64,000 nucleotides of DNA from Octopus sinensis. Taxonomy: Eukaryota. Made by a program: the position numbers and the translations under genes. The notes beneath the pieces are model-generated. The model did not search any database and was not told where the DNA came from. It was given only the letters and a program-made list of their open reading frames with translations. Numbering within the stretch: position 1 is the stretch's first letter; each line of letters starts with the position of its first letter. This document shows, in pieces, positions 4,087 to 25,640 of the stretch. The stretch spans positions 59,272,001 through 59,336,000 of the forward strand of contig NC_043005.1 in the NCBI RefSeq assembly GCF_006345805.1, written 5' to 3'.

Positions 4087-4498
4087 TAATAATAACCCTT
4101 TCTGCTATAGGCACAAGTTCTGGAATTTTGTGGGAGGCGGATAGTCGATTTATCGACTCCTAGTGTTTCACTGGCACTTAATTTATAGTCCCCGAAAGAT
4201 TGAAAGGTAAAGTCGATCTCGGCTAAATTTAAATTTAAAACGTAAAGACAGACGAAACGCCAACTCGCCGCCTAAAGAATAATAATCTTTTCTATTATAG
4301 GCACAAGGCCTGAAATTTGGAGGAGATTTTTAAGTCGATTACATCGACGTCAGTACTAAACTGGTAGTTATTTGATCGACCGCGAAATGATGACAGATAA
4401 AGTTGACCTCCGTGGAATTTGAACCCAGAACGTAAAGACGGACGAAATGCCACTAAGTATTTTGTCCGGCGTGCTAAGGATTCTGCCAGCTCGCCTCC
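3867..4498 (-). mobile_element. Cluster of three tandem SINE family-A copies separated by (AAT)n
   Basis: Three reverse copies of GGCGGCGAGCTGGCAGAATCGTTAGC...GGTCGACTTTGCCTTTCATCCTTTCGGGGTCGATAAA... at 3867-4002, 4095-4272 and 4285-4498. Confidence 0.85.
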
Positions 4499-19040: not shown

Positions 19041-19301
19041 TCGTGACCACCGTGACCGACCAGACTATCAGATGTTGCTACACCTCGCTGGTCACAATGC
19101 GCTTCAAATGACACCACACCGCTGGCTAAGAGAGCAGAAGAAAGAGAGAAAGTTGTGGCGAAAGAGTACAGCAGGGTCGCCACCAACCCCTGCCGGAGTC
19201 TCGTGGAGCTTCTAGGTGTTTTCTAGGTGGGGCTTTGTGAATCGAAACCACGAACCTACGACCGCGAGTCCGCTGCTCTAACCACTGAGCCATTGCGCCT
19301 C

Positions 19302-19350
<49 letters not shown>

Positions 19351-19648
19351 ATACACACATACACACACACACACACAAACACGCACATACACACACACCC
19401 ACACATATATATATGTGTGTGTGTGTTTGTGTGTGTGTGCGTGTGTGTATGTGTATGTCTTTGTGTCTGCCCCCCACTCCCTTGAAAACCGTTGCTGGTG
19501 TGTTTACGTCAACGTAACTTAGTGTTTCGGTTAAAAAAAAGATCGATAAGAATAAGTACCAGCTTAAAGAAATAAGCCCCGACTAAAGCCCTTCAAGGCG
19601 GTGCCCCAACATGGCCACAGTCAACTGACTGAAGCAAGTAAAAAATTA
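18808..19648 (+). mobile_element. SINE family D split by a family-C SINE inserted in its internal (TA)n
   Basis: Head GGCTGTGTGGTAAGA...GATTTGGTAGACGGAAACT 18808-18975. Tail GGTGTGTTTACGTC...GACTGAAGCAAGTAAAA 19430-19648. Confidence 0.8.
19041..19304 (-). mobile_element. tRNA-derived SINE family C
   Basis: Reverse head GGAGGCGCAATGGCTCAGTGGTTAGAGCAGCGGACTCGCGG...GGTTTCGATTC. Similar to 63052-63346. Confidence 0.8.
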
Positions 19649-20254
19649 CAAGCTATATACACCCATCCATCCATCCATCCACCCATCCATCCATCCATCC
19701 CTACATACATGCATACATACATAGTCTCTCTTCTAATTGTGGATCGTTCGGATCCTGCTCACCTCCTCTCGATTCAAGTGTGGCTTAGAAGCCATACTAT
19801 ATATATATATATAATGCCTTCATGTTTGTTTACTTAAATCCTATAAGACATCATGTTCGTTTGAATTTCTCTTTACGAATTTTTATCCATTTCTAATATC
19901 CTATTAATCCTCTTCAAAGAACACTTTTTATGCTGATATATTACATAGTCAATCCCTATATTACATAAAATCTGAAACTTGCTCATACTATTTTCTTAAC
20001 ATATGATGGTCGTTTACTGCACCATCCTTTACAATTTTCGCCGTGGTCATTGCTGATCTTGGTTAGTTTTTTTTCTCTCTCTCCCTCTCTCTGTATTCCT
20101 CTCTGTCCCATTCTCACTCACATGCATATACATACATAGTGTATGCTTGTGTACATATATAGACACGCATATACATAAATGCATGTATATATTGTATATA
20201 AAAATACGTACACTAATACATATGTGTGTATATGTGCGCTTGACATTTTAATGG

Positions 20255-20874
20255 AGAACCCATTTCTAGTCACCAGTGACTATTCGATCCAAAAAGGTTC
20301 ATTTGTGAGACGTGACAGCAAAGAAGAGAACACATTCACTCTCTGCGCGTGATTAGACTCGGAACGTTTGTGAGGAACCCATTGACCCAATTTACTAACT
20401 TTTCCGATGGCATGCAGGTGTCAATGAATGGTTGAATGACCAAATCCAAGCTTTTCTGTTAGTTCCTCAACAGTTACGATGAAACTTTGTTTTGCAAAAC
20501 ATCCTCGTCGTGCTCTTCAAATCTTCTAAGATGAGGCTCATCTTTTAGGCTGTAGTTTCCGGGTGGGAATTTCTGGAACCACCGTTGGTACTGGCTAACG
20601 CTTATTGCCCGATTTCCATATACTGCACATATTCCTCGCACTCTCCATTGCGTTCTTGCCTTTATTGAACTCATGAAGCAAATTATGCTGAATATGCTCC
20701 TTTGTCACTTCCATTATAGCTTTGAGAAATTAACTGTTAAAATGGAACTGCACTCTTCAAAACTTGCAATAAGAATAAATATAAGGTAAAATTACTACCT
20801 GCTTTTATAGCAAGTTAATGCAGGTTGTTTATCCCGTCACCCTCCGACTCATGAAAATGAAAAAAATGCATTTT

Positions 20875-20880
<6 letters not shown>
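20255..20880 (-). mobile_element. Mariner 5'-half relic, same family as 31070-32718
   Basis: ICAVYGNRAISVSQYQRWFQKFPPGNYSLKDEP and FLDRIVTGD*KWV. The 5' UTR matches 31085-31260. Confidence 0.85.
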
Positions 20881-20923
<43 letters not shown>

Positions 20924-20930
20924 TGTGTGT

Positions 20931-21384
<454 letters not shown>

Positions 21385-21420
21385 GTTTATATATATATAT
21401 ATATGTATATGTATATATGT

Positions 21421-21470
<50 letters not shown>

Positions 21471-21558
21471 AATATATGCATATACACACGTACATTAATT
21501 ATTATATATTATATGTTATTTAATATATTTTATATATTATTTAATATATATTATATAT

Positions 21559-21628
<70 letters not shown>

Positions 21629-21770
21629 CACACACACATACATACATAAATACTCAATACACTCGCACATACACACAGCGTCAGCGATCGGCCACTAACG
21701 TTATTATTTTTAGGAATAATAATGTTATCTTATATTCATACATATATATGTATACACCCCCACATACCTG

Positions 21771-21831
<61 letters not shown>

Positions 21832-22424
21832 ATATACACACATTTATATCTGTTTGTATGTGTATATGCCTGTCTGTTTTTCTCTATATATACATGTATA
21901 TTTATCATGAATGTAGGTTTTTATGTATGATTCTATGCATTTATGTGTGTGTGTGTGTATGTTTTTGGTTGTATTTGTGTGTGTGTGCGTGTGCGTGTGT
22001 TTGTGAATGTGTGTGTTCAAGTTTTTATATTTGATCATGTAGTGATATATTTCTCTTATATCGAAAAAAAATCTGCAATGGCATCTACATTAATCCGGAT
22101 ATAAATGCTGCAATGACGATGTTCGAGAGCCAAGATCTACGTCCATTTTATATGGACGACTTAAGAAACCAAGCCTTTTAAAACAGAAATTTATTGTTTT
22201 GTTTCTATTTACTAAGATTTACCTCTTCCATAATATATGTTTCTGTTGTTAACGAACTGGTTCCTTTGTATTAGTCAGTTTTGAAATGTTTCCACGAATG
22301 TTTCATGTATAGTTTGCAGTTGTAGCAGCAAATTGTCATCTTTTGTCAGAAATCGGTTAGTTATCAAGGTGGGTATCTGCCCCGGGTATAAAAGTTATCG
22401 GTATTGACCATATATTGGCAGGCT

Positions 22425-22560
22425 TCAATCGGTCGAATTTCCTCAAATGCTTATTTAATAAATTTCGATACTATAGGTTGATTGATCGAATTTCATAAGA
22501 CAAGCAATTGCCCGTATTTCATCAGACAGCTGATGGAATTTCATCAGCCCGACAGAATTT
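22425..22560 (+). repeat. Shorter, more decayed array of the same 26-bp unit (about 5 units)
   Basis: ggtcgaatttcctcaaatg, ttgatcgaatttcataagac, gacagctgatggaatttcatcag. Same orientation as 25081-25640. Confidence 0.7.
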
Positions 22561-22640
22561 TTATAGACTATAGAAGAGGACTTAGTATAGGTTACATACG
22601 ATAAGTTACAGTGTAGGTTATAGACTTAACTTACTAGCTA

Positions 22641-22806
22641 TGTAAATAGAGAATACTAACGAGTTCTCTATGGATACCGTATTTATTACGAGTGGTTTGT
22701 AAACGTATCTAACGAGCGAAAGCGAGTTAGATACGTTTACAAGCCACGAGTTGTAATAAATACGGTATCCATAGGGAATGAGTTGGGTATTTTATTTATT
22801 ACACAC
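22641..22806 (+). repeat. Long imperfect inverted repeat (hairpin) at the recombinase-element 3' end
   Basis: 22692-22713 pairs with 22726-22747 (21/22 plus one T.G). 22663-22689 pairs with 22750-22779 (two G.T, 3-nt bulge). Apex GCGAAAGC 22716-22723. Confidence 0.95.
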
Positions 22807-23134
22807 GAATAAACGACCATATTTTATTAATTTAATAATTAAATTCTTCACATCATGTTGAAGCGCGCATGAATACAGCTTGATTTCACGTCAGTGACGT
22901 CACAATGTGTAACTGTAAAAGGTGTCATGCCGCAGGAAGATAGTCCGACTTTATAACGCTAAGTTTTCAGGTGAAATGACTGATAACTGATGACTATTTA
23001 ACATTTTGTTAACATTCAAGTTCACGTTCAAGAAATACATAACACAGATTGAATCTTCAATAACTTTAATAATACTCAAACATGTTTTCGAGTAGCAATG
23101 TCAGTCAGAGTAGAGCACAATAGTCCAGGAAAAC

Positions 23135-24778
23135 TTAACAATCCTGATTATCTGTGAGACGAGGTCGCTTTGCATCTGAACCAAAGAAGTTCACATTGAT
23201 TGTTCCCCCATATATTGGAGCCGAGAAAATGGAGTGCAATGAACCAAAGCAAGTGACAGCGTTCCGAGATTGACTCGACGTAACGTTGACGGTGGAGGGG
23301 AGTTCACTTGCACTCATTGCTGCTGTGTGTGACGGAGGTACAAGCGAACCAGGCTGGTCGTTGTTGCTACTAAGGATGTTACTGATGGCACGATGACGAT
23401 CCATGGAAATATTGCTGTAACTATTGATGCTTTGCACATTACGATGTCCAGATATCTGCATGATTTCAGTTGGAGGAATGTTCTGGTCAGCGAGCTTCTG
23501 TACAAGGTATTTGCGTGCTGAATGGTTCGTGAATCTTCGATTGTCCAAACCAGCTGATTTAGCCATCCTTTTCATAATTGTACCTAGTTTGTTGACACCG
23601 ACCGGTTGACGTTTAAACCACGGATGAGAATGGGAGGCATCTTTGCAGTTGGTGGCCAAATAAAATGGTGAATCCGGCGATGAATAATCTGATGGTCTCA
23701 GATCAGCAAAACGCTTGTACAGGTTAACTGGACAACGCTCATCATTCGTCGCCCATGCTTTTGGGTAGATGTTACGTGCATGGTCGAGATTATCACCTTG
23801 ACAAGTTTTGGACTGTCGCTCCCTAAACTGAAGGAATTCCTTGCCTTCATTGTCAACATGCAAAGAAACGTCGCCCCATCACATGTCGTTGTGAGGTTTG
23901 ACACTCCGGATACCAAAGTGAACGGTGTTGTTCCACCATAGCGTGTTGAGGATGGATTCAGGTGTGTTCGGACCGAGCTGGTCACATTCCCATAGCTTGT
24001 TGATATCATCGTCGGAGAGAGATTCCGCGCGTTAAGGTAGGTTTCCCATTCCTTCACTTTTCAACAGCTTTTGCTTCATTTTTAGTACGTCATGTAGTTT
24101 CACGATGTCCCGTCCGAGAATAGTGACGTCGAGTAGTGTTTTGACTTCAGATATCTTTCAATACTGGATAACATTCCCCTCAAAGATGAAGGTTCATAGT
24201 TGCTACCGTTCGGCTTTCGTAACGAAATAAAGAAAGTACAGAGAATGTCACAAAGTTCGCTTTTTTTCGATAGATTCAATTGGACGCGTGTCGCCATTTG
24301 TCGCCATGAAAGCAAACAATCGTTTAACATCATAGTTTGTTTTCCGAAGAGTATTTTTATTTTGATTACCTTGAACGAATTTATCAATTCCAGAATGATC
24401 ATACCTCGGTTGAAATTCAAGATCATTATGGCTATCATCAAAGAAATCGCCACGAAGAAGATCATTGTACACCTCATCAGGGATGTTAAATGCAAGGTTC
24501 GATGACAATCCACTCGTCGATGACACTGTTTCAGGTACCTTTGTTAACCTGTATCCAGCAACATGTCGAATTTGGCCAGTATTTATCTTCACATTGAACA
24601 TTCTGTATGTTCCAAGAGGTTGAACAACGGATAATAATCTTCCCCCATCTTTACCATTAATCTTAACAAAATCATTCACCTTGATATCGATAACATTAAC
24701 TATCTTGTTGATAGATCTATCTGCACTGCAACAGTATCGACGAGCAGACGATATATGTTGTGATTTTTTTGGCAACAA
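23135..24778 (-). pseudogene. Tyrosine recombinase, Crypton/DUF3504 family (ZMYM/QRICH1/KCTD1-related domain), about 547 codons when repaired
   Basis: Hand reconstruction: ...IDKFVQGNQNKNTLRKTNYDVKRLF...[+1 fs in T7 run 24261-24267] ELCDILCTFFISLRKPNGSNYEPSSLRGMLSSIERYLKSKHY [-1 fs near 24110] VKLHDVLKMKQKLLKSEGMGNLP*RAESLSDDDINKLWECDQLGPNTPESILNTLWWNNTVHFGIRSVKPHNDM*WGD...RERQSKT...RCPVNLYKRF...PFYL...WFKRQPVGVNKLGTIMKRMAKSAGL...FTNHSARK...IMQISGHRNVQSINSY. Stops at 24032-24034 and 23879-23881. Catalytic R 23906-23908, H 23522-23524, R 23513-23515, H 23444-23446, Y 23417-23419. Confidence 0.92.
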
Positions 24779-25080
24779 AAAATTGAATTATGACCAGAAA
24801 TGTTTATATTTTATCTGTATATGACTTTAAGTGATATCTGGTATAAAAAAGATAGTATGTTTGTTTAATTACATGGCTACATTCTACCGGCTCGTGAAAG
24901 TTTAGTTGTAACTTATGAATGACAAAAGTAGTGCCGTCACCGTGACCTCGGGTCATCACCATGGATTGACCAATCAGAAGCAGCGCTCGCAGTATCTGAC
25001 ATATGTTAGATACCAAAAATATCTCAAAGTGTTCTCACTCACATGTGTGTAATAATCTATAATACAACCTAAAATGACGA

Positions 25081-25640
25081 GGACAGTTCTGCGAATTTTC
25101 TGAGCCTGACAGTTGAGATCGAACTTCATTGAACGGGCAACTGGTCGAATTTGATCCAATTTGATTCAGGGAGTTTCTCAGACGAGCAGTTGATCGAGGG
25201 TCAGTTGATCGAATCTTATTTGATGAACAGTTGATCAAATTTCATTAAATGAACAACCGATCGAAAATTTTAACTGGACAGTTTCTCGAATTTCACGTGA
25301 CAAAGTTGATCGACTTTCATAAGATGGGCAGTCGATCGAATTCCACCAAATGGACAGGTGATCGAATTTCATCGAACAGAGACAATTGATTGAATTTCAT
25401 ACAACAGACAGGGGCTCCAATATCATTAAAAGGGCAGTTGATCAAATTTGGTGAGACAAACAGTTGATCGAATTTCATCAGATGGACAATTGCTCGAATT
25501 CCTTTCAACTGACAGTTGATCCAACTTCATCTTTGGGCACATGATCAATTTCTGTCAAATTGACAGTTGATCGAATTTTAACAATCGGACGTTTGACCTA
25601 ATTTCAGCAAATGTGTGTTGGTCGAATTTAATGGGCTATG
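25081..25640 (+). repeat. Degenerate 26-bp minisatellite array, about 20 units, consensus GACAGTTGATCGAATTTCATCAAATG
   Basis: Units read directly, e.g. aacagttgatcgaatttcatcagatg, ggcagtcgatcgaattccaccaaatg, gacagttgatcgaattttaacaatcg. Confidence 0.9.

What the first reader, a model, noticed from the sequence alone, without database searches (positions are those of the whole stretch)
22641..25052. Apparently complete Crypton-like element with intact catalytic residues but a recently broken ORF
Seen: a 2412-bp unit bounded by TGTAA direct repeats. The ~547-codon YR frame is broken by only four lesions: +1 in a T7 run, a compensating -1 about 155 nt later, a TAA, and a TGA that looks like CpG decay of CGA. 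All of R, K, HxxR, GH and Y are retained. Established: DUF3504 domains of ZMYM2/3/4, QRICH1 and KCTD1 derive from CryptonA recombinases, and the domesticated forms typically lose catalytic residues. Inference: this is a transposon copy, not a host gene, from a family young enough that active or near-intact siblings may exist in this genome.
Basis: partly seen in the sequence, partly recalled or inferred. Interest (0 to 1): 0.8.

Follow-up and report, generated by a model that had tools for sequence, protein, structure and literature searches.

The report
Decayed Crypton transposon copy in octopus
This is a full-length but dead copy of a small tyrosine-recombinase ("Crypton") jumping gene in an octopus genome, from a young family in which at least two sister copies still have unbroken genes. 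It is an ordinary member of a rare transposon class, and comparing it with relatives exposes the class's conserved DNA ends.

Summary
The element lies on the minus strand. The real ORF is 522 intronless codons (24703..23135), not about 547. It carries five lesions, not four. The four reported ones are confirmed, and both stop codons derive from CGA. All catalytic residues (R266, K299, H394, R397, H420, Y429) are intact.

TGTAA is not the family's bounding repeat. The family shows only an imperfect 4-bp match: TTAT at the 5' end and WTAY just past the 3' end.

This is a neutrally decaying CryptonA copy, not a host gene. Two siblings keep unbroken ORFs.

One feature looks undescribed in the papers I could search. 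The last ~150 bp form a long palindrome carrying four co-oriented ACTCG motifs. At least 15 distant CryptonA-like loci keep this architecture, and an alignment of ten families shows strong compensatory variation. It is probably the cis-acting recombination region.

Verdict: new member of a known kind, moderate interest.

The parts
22643..25055 (-). Whole CryptonA-type element (2413 bp), full length relative to siblings of about 2415-2420 bp
   Evidence: BLAST against 9 sibling loci ends at these coordinates, and the flanks are unrelated.
25029..25055 (-). 5' terminal motif TTATTACACACATGTGAGTGAGAACAC. The first 8 nt (TTATTAC-) are shared with two metagenome CryptonA families.
   Evidence: Identical in 9 of 10 Octopus copies, with one substitution in L005. 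Families B and E begin TTTATTAC....
24704..25028 (-). 5' untranslated region, presumably holding the promoter
   Evidence: Lies between the shared 5' end and the ATG of the siblings. Function not tested.
23135..24703 (-). Pseudogenised tyrosine-recombinase ORF: 522 codons, intronless, five lesions
   Evidence: Alignment to the intact sibling ORFs L002 and L003. Pfam DUF3504 and Phage_integrase.
24701..24703 (-).
   Evidence: All 8 siblings have ATG here.
24261..24267 (-). Lesion 2: +1 base in the homopolymer run (T7 on the + strand). The run arose from one inserted base plus a C>A substitution.
24104..24105 (-). Lesion 3: -1 base (one T of TT on the element strand is missing), which restores the frame
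24032..24034 (-). Lesion 4: codon 224, CGA>TAA, by two CpG-type transitions
23879..23881 (-). Lesion 5: codon 275, CGA>TGA
24539..24670 (-). N-terminal small beta-barrel domain (codons about 12-55)
   Evidence: AlphaFold model of sibling P0109 shows five strands at residues 12-55. Foldseek gives weak matches (E about 0.01-0.03) to the ribosomal eS4 barrel and to YorP.
23384..23983 (-). Catalytic (DUF3504 / Phage_integrase) domain. Active-site codons: R266 23906-23908, K299 23807-23809, H394 23522-23524, R397 23513-23515, H420 23444-23446, Y429 23417-23419. All are intact.
   Evidence: The model has a Cre-like fold.
22654..22798 (-). 3' subterminal long imperfect palindrome. AATAAA signals sit in and just upstream of its outer arms.
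   Evidence: DNA fold -43.8 kcal/mol, z = -12. Inverted repeats I1, I2 and I4. Conserved with compensatory changes across 10 families.
22660..22751 (-). Four ACTCG motifs, all in the same orientation, embedded in the palindrome. On the + strand they read CGAGT at 22660-64, 22689-93, 22723-27 and 22747-51.
   Evidence: No opposite-orientation copy occurs in the 3' 175 nt of any Octopus copy.
22646..22659 (-). 3' terminal tail ...TTAGTATTCTCTAT, conserved as GTA(A/T)(T/A)..CTAT(AT) in distant families
22642..22645 (-). 3' junction tetranucleotide TTAC (WTAY across copies). It imperfectly repeats the element's first four bases, TTAT (25052-25055). Probably crossover microhomology that is partly target-derived.
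   Evidence: The eight independent junctions read TTAC, ATAT, ATAC, TTCT, TTAT, TTAT, TTAT, ATAT, and the variation does not follow subfamily.

Best explanation
Window 22643-25055 (minus strand) is a complete but coding-dead copy of a CryptonA-type DNA transposon. The family is young and lives in the Octopus vulgaris / O. sinensis lineage.

**What the element encodes (shown).** It has one intronless gene for a tyrosine recombinase. The protein has a small N-terminal beta-barrel, followed by a Cre-like core-binding domain and catalytic domain.

**How the family most likely moves (inferred from the Goodwin / Kojima-Jurka Crypton model and from the anatomy seen here).**
1. The recombinase excises the element as a double-stranded circle.
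2. In the circle, the 3' tail (...GTATTCTCTAT) meets the 5' end (TTATTAC...). This makes an AT-rich crossover region flanked by an imperfect inverted pair, GTATT/ATTAC.
3. The circle recombines with AT-rich genomic pseudo-sites of the form (A)T|WTAY.
4. No target-site duplication results, only a 4-bp imperfect direct repeat.

**The 3' palindrome (role inferred).** The conserved palindrome with four co-oriented ACTCG motifs is probably the accessory or recombinase-binding region.

**This copy (shown).** After insertion it decayed neutrally. It lost its start codon, gained a +1/-1 frameshift pair, and had two CGA codons turned into stops. It cannot make recombinase. It keeps both termini, so a sibling's enzyme could in principle still move it. 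That last point is inference.
For: **Protein**
- Domains: DUF3504 8.5e-26 and Phage_integrase 7.8e-9.
- The only PDB sequence relative is QRICH1.
- The AlphaFold model of a sibling matches QRICH1, Cre/Tre, XerA, IntI, XerH, Flp and Tn1549 Int.
- R266, R397, H420 and Y429 are invariant, and K299 and H394 nearly invariant, in 17 homologues. All six are intact in the window.

**Family**
- The best protein hit is O. sinensis XP_029643456 (93% identity). Its 90% cluster holds 10 O. vulgaris models.
- Nine fetched copies share both ends, and their flanks are unrelated.
- Divergence from the family majority is 0.8-1.9%.
- Decay is neutral: 23 synonymous against 87 non-synonymous private substitutions.
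- ORFs are intact in L002 and L003.
- There are no terminal inverted repeats and no second ORF.

**Junctions**
- The 3' junction reads WTAY against the 5' TTAT, matching at 26 of 32 positions.
- The last two bases of the 5' flank are AT in 5 of 9 copies, matching the element's 3'-terminal AT.

**Palindrome**
- Folding z-scores are -12 and -13.7.
- The same architecture occurs in at least 15 metagenome loci with 35-47% protein identity.
- 86.6% of cells pair, against 34-43% in the slid controls. 25 of 31 pairs show compensatory change. 0 of 500 shuffles reach the observed values.
Against: - No transposition, circle or empty site has been observed. I could not retrieve an orthologous or paralogous empty site.
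- Copy number is known only from copies that received gene models.
- The crossover model rests on eight independent insertions in an AT-rich genome, so the WTAY and GTA preferences have little statistical power.
- The inverted pair at the joined ends is short and imperfect (4 of 5 bases).
- The intact siblings carry private substitutions. L003 has a 4-aa deletion right after the catalytic Tyr, so current activity is unproven.
- Placement within CryptonA rests on domain content and best hits, not on a phylogeny.
Confidence: 0.9

Rival explanations
1. It is a pseudogene of a domesticated host DUF3504 gene (ZMYM-, QRICH1- or KIAA1958-like), not a mobile element.
For: Databases name the relatives 'zinc finger MYM-type 2-like', 'KIAA1958 homolog' or 'QRICH1-like'. 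QRICH1 is the only solved structure found by sequence search.
Against: - The catalytic set is complete, whereas domesticated DUF3504 proteins have lost Tyr and the second Arg (PMC3212892).
- The gene is intronless. There are at least 10 copies at unrelated loci with identical ends.
- Copies decay neutrally.
Confidence: 0.02
2. It is the recombinase module of a larger element: a DIRS/Ngaro-type YR retrotransposon, a composite such as MarCry, or a giant cargo-carrying element.
For: YR genes occur in all of those. One sibling, L010, is annotated as a chimera with a DUF4817/HTH protein.
Against: - In 9 copies, similarity stops within 1-3 nt of the same two positions, 2.4 kb apart, and the flanks are unrelated.
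- The unit has no second ORF, no reverse transcriptase, and no terminal inverted or split direct repeats.
- L010 is simply a copy truncated at element position 974.
Confidence: 0.02
3. The element is as described, but the 3' palindrome and ACTCG motifs serve transcription (terminator, polyadenylation or small-RNA hairpin), not recombination. The WTAY match is then only AT-rich target bias.
For: - AATAAA signals lie in and just upstream of the outer arms.
- The genome is about 65% A+T, so short AT matches are cheap.
- Kojima & Jurka found no terminal repeats in animal Cryptons.
Against: - The palindrome ends a fixed ~14-20 nt before the exact 3' terminus in every family.
- The terminal tail and the 5' TTTATTAC are conserved between families that share only 35-47% protein identity.
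- In L009, the last 74 nt are better conserved at DNA level (78%) than the coding region (67-69%).
- The strict co-orientation of ACTCG inside an otherwise symmetric sequence (46 against 0 in 17 loci) is what a polarity-setting recombination site would show. A terminator hairpin has no need for it.
Confidence: 0.2

Closest known systems
CryptonA elements of animals (Kojima & Jurka 2011, Mobile DNA 2:12; e.g. CryptonA-1_OL in medaka, Crypton-1_SP in sea urchin, and elements in Lottia gigantea)
   Same: - A single gene for a DUF3504-type tyrosine recombinase with full catalytic residues and no C-terminal DNA-binding domain.
- No terminal inverted repeats and no target-site duplication.
- Multi-copy, with a patchy distribution. 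A mollusc host is already on record.
   Different: - The host is a cephalopod. In the papers I could search, none describes a Crypton in Octopus.
- The termini are defined here to the base.
- An N-terminal beta-barrel is present.
- A conserved 3' palindrome carries co-oriented ACTCG motifs. The 2011 paper reports no terminal repeats for animal Cryptons and never uses the words palindrome or hairpin.
Fungal and oomycete Cryptons (CryptonF and CryptonS; Goodwin et al. 2003 model)
   Same: - A YR-only DNA transposon with a proposed circular intermediate.
- Short (4-6 bp) direct repeats at the ends, interpreted as microhomology with the target rather than duplication.
   Different: - A different YR clade. 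CryptonF has a GCR1_C domain, which this element lacks.
- The repeat here is only 4 bp and imperfect (TTAT/WTAY).
Glomhoppers (DUF3504-encoding CryptonA elements of Glomeromycota; PMC13465315)
   Same: DUF3504 YR with retained catalytic residues. A mix of intact intronless copies and decayed copies.
   Different: The host is fungal. Terminal repeats are reported as variable or poorly conserved, whereas the termini here are sharply conserved.
Domesticated DUF3504 genes (QRICH1, ZMYM2/3/4, KIAA1958, KCTD1)
   Same: Homologous fold and sequence. QRICH1 (9hjt) is the best PDB match both by sequence and by fold.
   Different: Those are single-copy host genes with introns, and they have lost the catalytic Tyr and Arg. 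This element keeps all catalytic residues and is mobile-element-like.
Cre/loxP, and Tn916/Tn1549-type integrases with circular intermediates
   Same: - A Cre-like two-domain fold (Foldseek E about 1e-7). Tn1549 Int bound to circular-intermediate DNA is also among the matches.
- The proposed joined-end site has inverted half-sites around an AT-rich spacer of about 8 bp.
- Integration goes into AT-rich pseudo-sites.
   Different: - These are resemblances of mechanism only. Sequence identity is 11-15%.
- The half-sites are much shorter and imperfect.
- None of this chemistry has been tested for any CryptonA.

Membership tests
CryptonA (animal Crypton DNA transposons) | Encodes a tyrosine recombinase with the catalytic R-(K)-H-R-(H/W)-Y set | tested here: met
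   R266, K299, H394, R397, H420 and Y429 are intact in the window's conceptual translation and in siblings. Pfam Phage_integrase 7.8e-9. Cre-like fold.
CryptonA (animal Crypton DNA transposons) | YR of the DUF3504 type, with no GCR1_C or other C-terminal DNA-binding domain | tested here: met
   PF12012 at 8.5e-26. No other Pfam domain except a sub-threshold QRICH1 N-domain. The C-terminal 80 residues are predicted disordered.
CryptonA (animal Crypton DNA transposons) | A YR-only element: no reverse transcriptase, methyltransferase or DDE transposase | tested here: met
   One ORF in a 2.4-kb unit bounded by unrelated flanks in 9 copies.
CryptonA (animal Crypton DNA transposons) | No terminal inverted repeats, no long terminal repeats, no target-site duplication; at most short direct repeats | tested here: met
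   No terminal inverted or direct repeat longer than 4-5 nt joins the two ends. Only an imperfect TTAT/WTAY match is present.
CryptonA (animal Crypton DNA transposons) | Repeated in the genome at non-homologous sites with shared boundaries | tested here: met
   Window plus L001-L008 and L010. L001 and L006 are orthologous; all the others have distinct flanks.
CryptonA (animal Crypton DNA transposons) | Phylogenetic placement of the YR inside the CryptonA clade | not tested
   No tree including reference Repbase Cryptons was built. The inference rests on domain content and on best hits being mollusc and cnidarian DUF3504 recombinases.
CryptonA (animal Crypton DNA transposons) | Excision as a circle and YR-mediated reintegration | not testable with these tools
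   Needs eccDNA sequencing, inverse PCR or biochemical data.
Domesticated DUF3504 host genes (ZMYM / QRICH1 / KIAA1958 / KCTD1) | Loss of catalytic Tyr and second Arg; single-copy, intron-bearing, syntenic | tested here: not met
   The catalytic set is complete. The gene is intronless and multi-copy.
DIRS / Ngaro YR retrotransposons | Reverse transcriptase/RNase H ORF and split or inverted terminal repeats | tested here: not met
   No such ORF or repeats occur within or beside the shared unit.

The most novel reading that the evidence does not exclude
The conserved 3' subterminal palindrome, with its four co-oriented near-palindromic ACTCGT units, may be the so-far undescribed cis-acting recombination site of a large CryptonA clade (molluscs and the unidentified hosts of the metagenome loci). 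It would act together with the conserved ends (5' TTTATTAC..., 3' ...GTAAT..CTAT), which form a lox-like core when joined in a circle. The TC centre of each ACTCGT would set polarity, and the extra N-terminal beta-barrel of the recombinase might read these motifs as arm-type sites, as lambda and Tn916 integrases read theirs. With an intact sibling ORF in O. vulgaris, this would give the first experimentally tractable animal Crypton: a defined recombinase plus defined sites.
Probability: 0.4. Interest if true: 0.65.

Novelty: new member of a known kind. Interest (0 to 1): 0.4.

Why it matters
Cryptons are the least understood class of eukaryotic DNA transposons. As far as I know (not checked in the papers searched), no animal Crypton has been shown to move, and the reference description of animal Cryptons found no terminal repeats.

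This octopus family gives base-precise termini and several independent insertion sites. It also provides at least one uninterrupted recombinase gene with all catalytic residues. A structured 3' region is conserved, with compensatory changes, in at least 15 loci from distantly related families (35-47% protein identity). Those are the ingredients needed to test the circle-and-reintegrate model directly.

The family also offers a living comparison for how the QRICH1/ZMYM DUF3504 domain was derived from an active recombinase.

The window copy itself is an ordinary dead transposon copy and has no evident effect on the host.

Tried and rejected
1. **Paralogous empty site.** I joined the two flanks (300 nt each) and searched the window and all held loci. 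Nothing spans the junction. An orthologous empty site could not be fetched, because no tool searches eukaryotic genomes by DNA.
2. **Non-autonomous derivatives or solo ends.** The 5' end, 3' end and palindrome-arm motifs (up to 4 mismatches) occur only in the known copies across the 213 kb held.
Rejected as a family feature, because it is absent from the 3' junction of the other seven independent insertions.
4. **Sequence search of PDB for a catalytically characterised YR.** Only QRICH1 passes. Tn1549 Int is marginal at E = 0.76. The link to Cre and Xer needed the fold search.
5. **Metagenome families D and F, and L009.** These were meant to define 5' ends. Their boundaries were ambiguous (shared flanks, or only one copy), so I did not use them for the 5' end.
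6. **Family A (WLWD contigs).** No strong palindrome was found within the loop limit of my scan, so the palindrome is not universal among DUF3504 elements.
7. **Literature.** Searches for a described Crypton palindrome or hairpin, and for Cryptons in octopus, found nothing relevant.
8. **Species of the window.** Not settled. It is O. vulgaris, O. sinensis or a very close relative, judged by 97-98% identity to their copies.
Full report
**1. What is in the sequence**

The region contains the pieces of one long reading frame on the minus strand. The frame runs in one phase from about 24778. It shifts by +1 in a homopolymer run (T7 on the + strand, 24261-24267). It shifts back about 160 nt later, at 24104/24105. 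It then passes a TAA (24032-24034) and a TGA (23879-23881), and ends at 23135. TGTAA is present at 22641-22645 and at 25048-25052. The conceptual protein matches Pfam DUF3504 (8.5e-26) and Phage_integrase (7.8e-9), and weakly the QRICH1 N-domain. Its only relative among solved structures, by sequence, is human QRICH1.

**2. Identity and family**

A search of the protein collection gives Octopus sinensis XP_029643456 as the top hit (497 aa, 93% identity). About a hundred DUF3504 recombinases follow, from molluscs, cnidarians and metagenomes, at 30-60% identity. The 90% cluster of the top hit holds ten O. vulgaris gene models on six chromosomes.

I fetched nine loci: L001 from O. sinensis, and L002-L008 and L010 from O. 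vulgaris.

- All nine align to the window from 25055, and the eight with a 3' end align down to about 22643. Pairwise identity to the window over ungapped columns is 97.0-97.8% for seven copies. L008 carries a large internal deletion, and L010 stops at element position 974.
- Their flanks are unrelated.
- The exception is L001 and L006. They have identical flanks and are 99.1% identical, so they are one insertion inherited by both species.
- Copies differ from the family majority by 0.8-1.9%, and the window copy by 1.67%.

The window is a separate locus in O. vulgaris, O. sinensis or a very close relative.

**3. Corrections to the observation**

Alignment to the siblings fixes the ORF at 522 codons in a single exon, window 24703..23135. 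Against the siblings the window has five disabling changes:

| Lesion | Window position | Change |
|---|---|---|
| 2 | 24261-24267 | one extra base; with a neighbouring C>A substitution this creates the 7-base run |
| 3 | about 24104/24105 | -1 base, which restores the frame |
| 4 | 24032-24034 (codon 224) | CGA>TAA, two CpG-type transitions |
| 5 | 23879-23881 (codon 275) | CGA>TGA |

The window's own substitutions fall 10:7:12 over codon positions 1, 2 and 3. Over all eight full-length copies, private substitutions fall 32:49:29, with 23 synonymous and 87 non-synonymous, which is the neutral pattern. The few differences that separate the two subfamilies are mostly synonymous (5 of 8). This hints at selection on the active lineage, but the numbers are small.

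Columns R266, R397, H420 and Y429 are invariant, and K299 and H394 nearly so, in 17 homologues. All six codons are intact in the window.

Among the siblings:
- L002 encodes an unbroken 522-aa protein with all six residues.
- L003 encodes 518 aa, with a 4-residue deletion directly after the Tyr.
- L001 encodes 497 aa, ending at a premature stop in the disordered tail.
- L004 has R397H.

**4. Boundaries**

In element orientation, every copy begins flank|TTATTACACACATGTGAG... and ends ...GTATT(C/G)TCTAT(T/A)T(A/C)|flank. At the 5' end it occupies element positions 4-8 and belongs to the element. At the 3' end it straddles the junction and exists only in this copy. The true unit is 22643-25055.

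The four bases after the constant ...TCTAT read TTAC, ATAT, ATAC, TTCT, TTAT, TTAT, TTAT and ATAT in the eight independent insertions. That is 26 of 32 matches to the element's first four bases, TTAT. The variation does not follow subfamily, and it far exceeds the 1-2% per-site divergence. These bases are therefore at least partly target-derived. The last two bases of the 5' flank are AT in 5 of 9 copies, matching the element's 3'-terminal AT.

This is the pattern described for Cryptons: short direct repeats that reflect microhomology with the target, not a duplication. The sample is small and the genome is AT-rich, so I treat the (A)T|WTAY preference as provisional.

**5. Protein architecture**

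An AlphaFold model of the intact sibling has mean pLDDT 71.7, and most 10-residue blocks of the core score 80-94. It shows a five-stranded beta-barrel at residues 12-55, a disordered linker, a helical domain, a catalytic domain and a disordered tail. Foldseek against the PDB finds the following:

- QRICH1 at 1e-10;
- Cre and Tre on lox DNA at about 1e-7, covering both domains;
- XerA, integron integrase, XerH, Flp, and Tn1549 integrase bound to circular-intermediate DNA.

The barrel alone weakly resembles ribosomal eS4 and YorP barrels.

**6. Conserved cis structure (beyond the finding)**

The last ~150 bp of the element form a long imperfect palindrome (fold -43.8 kcal/mol, z = -12). It contains four ACTCG motifs, all in the same orientation.

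A related family with only 61% protein identity (L009) has the same layout (z = -13.7). Its last 74 nt are 78% identical to the octopus element at DNA level, better than its coding region at 67-69%.

A scan of metagenome contigs with the protein alignment returned 80 CryptonA-like loci.

- In at least 15 of about 50 loci with enough downstream sequence, a palindrome of 90-170 nt lies 250-650 nt beyond the end of the recombinase match.
- These palindromes carry 2-4 ACTCG motifs and no CGAGT. In 17 loci the totals are 46 against 0.
- The layout is: outer arm, middle arm, ACTCGT, inner arm, a central direct repeat CTCACTCGTTCG..CTCACTCGTTCG, then the mirrored arms with another ACTCGT, then a tail GTAAT..CTAT(AT).

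On an alignment of ten families, 86.6% of cells pair, against 34-43% when the partner columns are slid. 25 of 31 pairs show compensatory change. No shuffle out of 500 reaches the observed values. ACTCGT pairs with its counterpart except at the central TC. The symmetry of the palindrome is therefore broken only at those dinucleotides, and always in the same direction.

Related metagenome copies lose similarity right after ...CTAT(AT) followed by WTAY, as in octopus. Two families begin with TTTATTAC..., again as in octopus.

When the two ends are joined they read GTATT-CTCTAT|TT-ATTAC. This is a short imperfect inverted pair around an 8-bp AT-rich spacer, which is the general form of a tyrosine-recombinase core site.

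I found no description of this palindrome in the searchable literature. The reference paper reports no terminal repeats in animal Cryptons and never uses the words palindrome or hairpin. Repbase entries were not available to me.

**7. Mechanism**

*Shown:*
- a Cre-like recombinase gene with an intact active site in siblings;
- precise ends shared by all copies;
- no terminal inverted repeats and no target-site duplication;
- neutral decay of copies;
- a conserved, co-varying 3' palindrome and conserved terminal motifs.

*Inferred:*
- excision as a circle, with recombination between the joined-end core and AT-rich pseudo-sites, following the Goodwin model for Cryptons;
- the palindrome and the ACTCGT motifs as accessory or polarity-setting binding sites, possibly read by the N-terminal barrel;
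- possible mobilisation of this dead copy in trans.

*Rivals:*
- A host-gene pseudogene and part of a larger element are both contradicted by the copy structure.
- A transcriptional role for the palindrome is not excluded.

**8. Comparison, novelty and score**

The element meets every structural criterion of a CryptonA that I could test. Placement by phylogeny and the circular intermediate were not tested. It fails the criteria for domesticated DUF3504 genes and for DIRS/Ngaro retrotransposons. Molluscan CryptonA elements are already known from Lottia, so this is a new member of a known kind. The window copy itself is ordinary.

What raises the interest above that of a routine repeat annotation is the combination of base-precise termini, an intact sibling recombinase, and a conserved structured 3' region. 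Together these make the Crypton mechanism testable. Interest 0.4.

Noticed in passing
window 22654-22798 (minus strand); L009:5740-5866; L012, L016, L022, L024, L028, L029, L035, L037, L061, L063, L067, L070, L074, L087, L088 (250-650 nt downstream of the YR match): A long 3' subterminal palindrome with 2-4 ACTCG motifs, all co-oriented, is conserved in CryptonA-like elements that share only 35-61% protein identity. The arms co-vary: 25 of 31 pairs show compensatory change, and 86.6% of cells pair against about 38% in slid controls.
   Followed up: yes
window 25048-25055 and 22646-22659; L024:505 and 2444; L070:1905 and 3852; L015:2047: Terminal motifs are shared across families: 5' (T)TTATTAC... 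and 3' ...GTA(A/T)(T/A)..CTAT(AT). Joined head to tail they form a short imperfect inverted pair (GTATT/ATTAC) around an AT-rich spacer of about 8 bp, like a recombinase core site. Five of nine octopus target sites have GTA 10-14 nt upstream of the insertion point.
   Followed up: partly
L001:5649-8015 (O. sinensis) and L006:2831-5250 (O. vulgaris): This is the same insertion in both species (identical flanks, 99.1% identity). The ORF is nearly intact in O. sinensis (497 aa) but split into two gene models in O. vulgaris. The pair gives a yardstick of 0.9% for divergence between the two species.
   Followed up: partly
L001, L002, L003, L008, near alignment column 2446 of the element (palindrome centre): Four copies lack 15-34 nt at the centre of the palindrome. 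L001 lacks 34 nt even though its ortholog L006 keeps them. This could be palindrome-centre instability in vivo, or collapse of the hairpin during assembly.
   Followed up: no
L010:3639-4622 (O. vulgaris OX597825): This copy is truncated after element position 974 and is annotated as the first exon of a 59-kb chimeric gene model. The model continues into DUF4817/HTH sequence of a kind usual in Tc1/mariner-type transposases (my reading, not tested), duplicated in tandem.
   Followed up: no
L003 (P0112) and L004: The 'intact' 518-aa sibling has a 4-residue deletion (SNIS) immediately after the catalytic tyrosine. L004 has R397H in the HxxR motif. Only L002 (P0109) combines a full ORF with an untouched active site.
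   Followed up: partly
window 25082-25640 and 22426-22560: A diverged 26-bp tandem repeat (consensus CAGTTGATCGAATTTCATTAAATGGA, about 14.6 copies at 25202-25578) lies on both sides of the element. The element sits in about 110 bp of non-repeat sequence inside or at the edge of this array. The left flank (22616-22626, TAGGTTATAGA) and the right flank (25056-25071) are partly inverted copies of each other.
   Followed up: no
window 22895-22902: A perfect palindromic TGACGTCA (CRE-like site) within GTGACGTCACTGACGTGA lies in the 3' untranslated part of the element. It is conserved in the O. sinensis copy.
   Followed up: no
L017, L018, L020, L026, L036, L041, L051, L071, L075, L079 (WLWD/WLWI contigs): This is a ~1.8-kb DUF3504 family with ends ATTATTCATTTG... 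and ...CCTAATAA. Most 5' flanks end in ATATAT. My scan found no strong palindrome in it. The 5' flank of L026 (CTCGCTCGCTACGCTCGCTCG) and a stretch of L020 about 20 nt upstream of position 4486 (CGAGCGAGCGAAGCGAGCGAAGC) look like the central repeat of the palindrome seen in other families.
   Followed up: no
window 19300-22020: A dense run of microsatellites ((TA)n of about 300 bp at 21266-21562, plus (AC)n, (TG)n and (ACAT)n) lies just left of the element. Apart from the Crypton fragments, the 64-kb window has only four ORFs of 130 aa or more, and two of them are low-complexity repeat translations.
   Followed up: no
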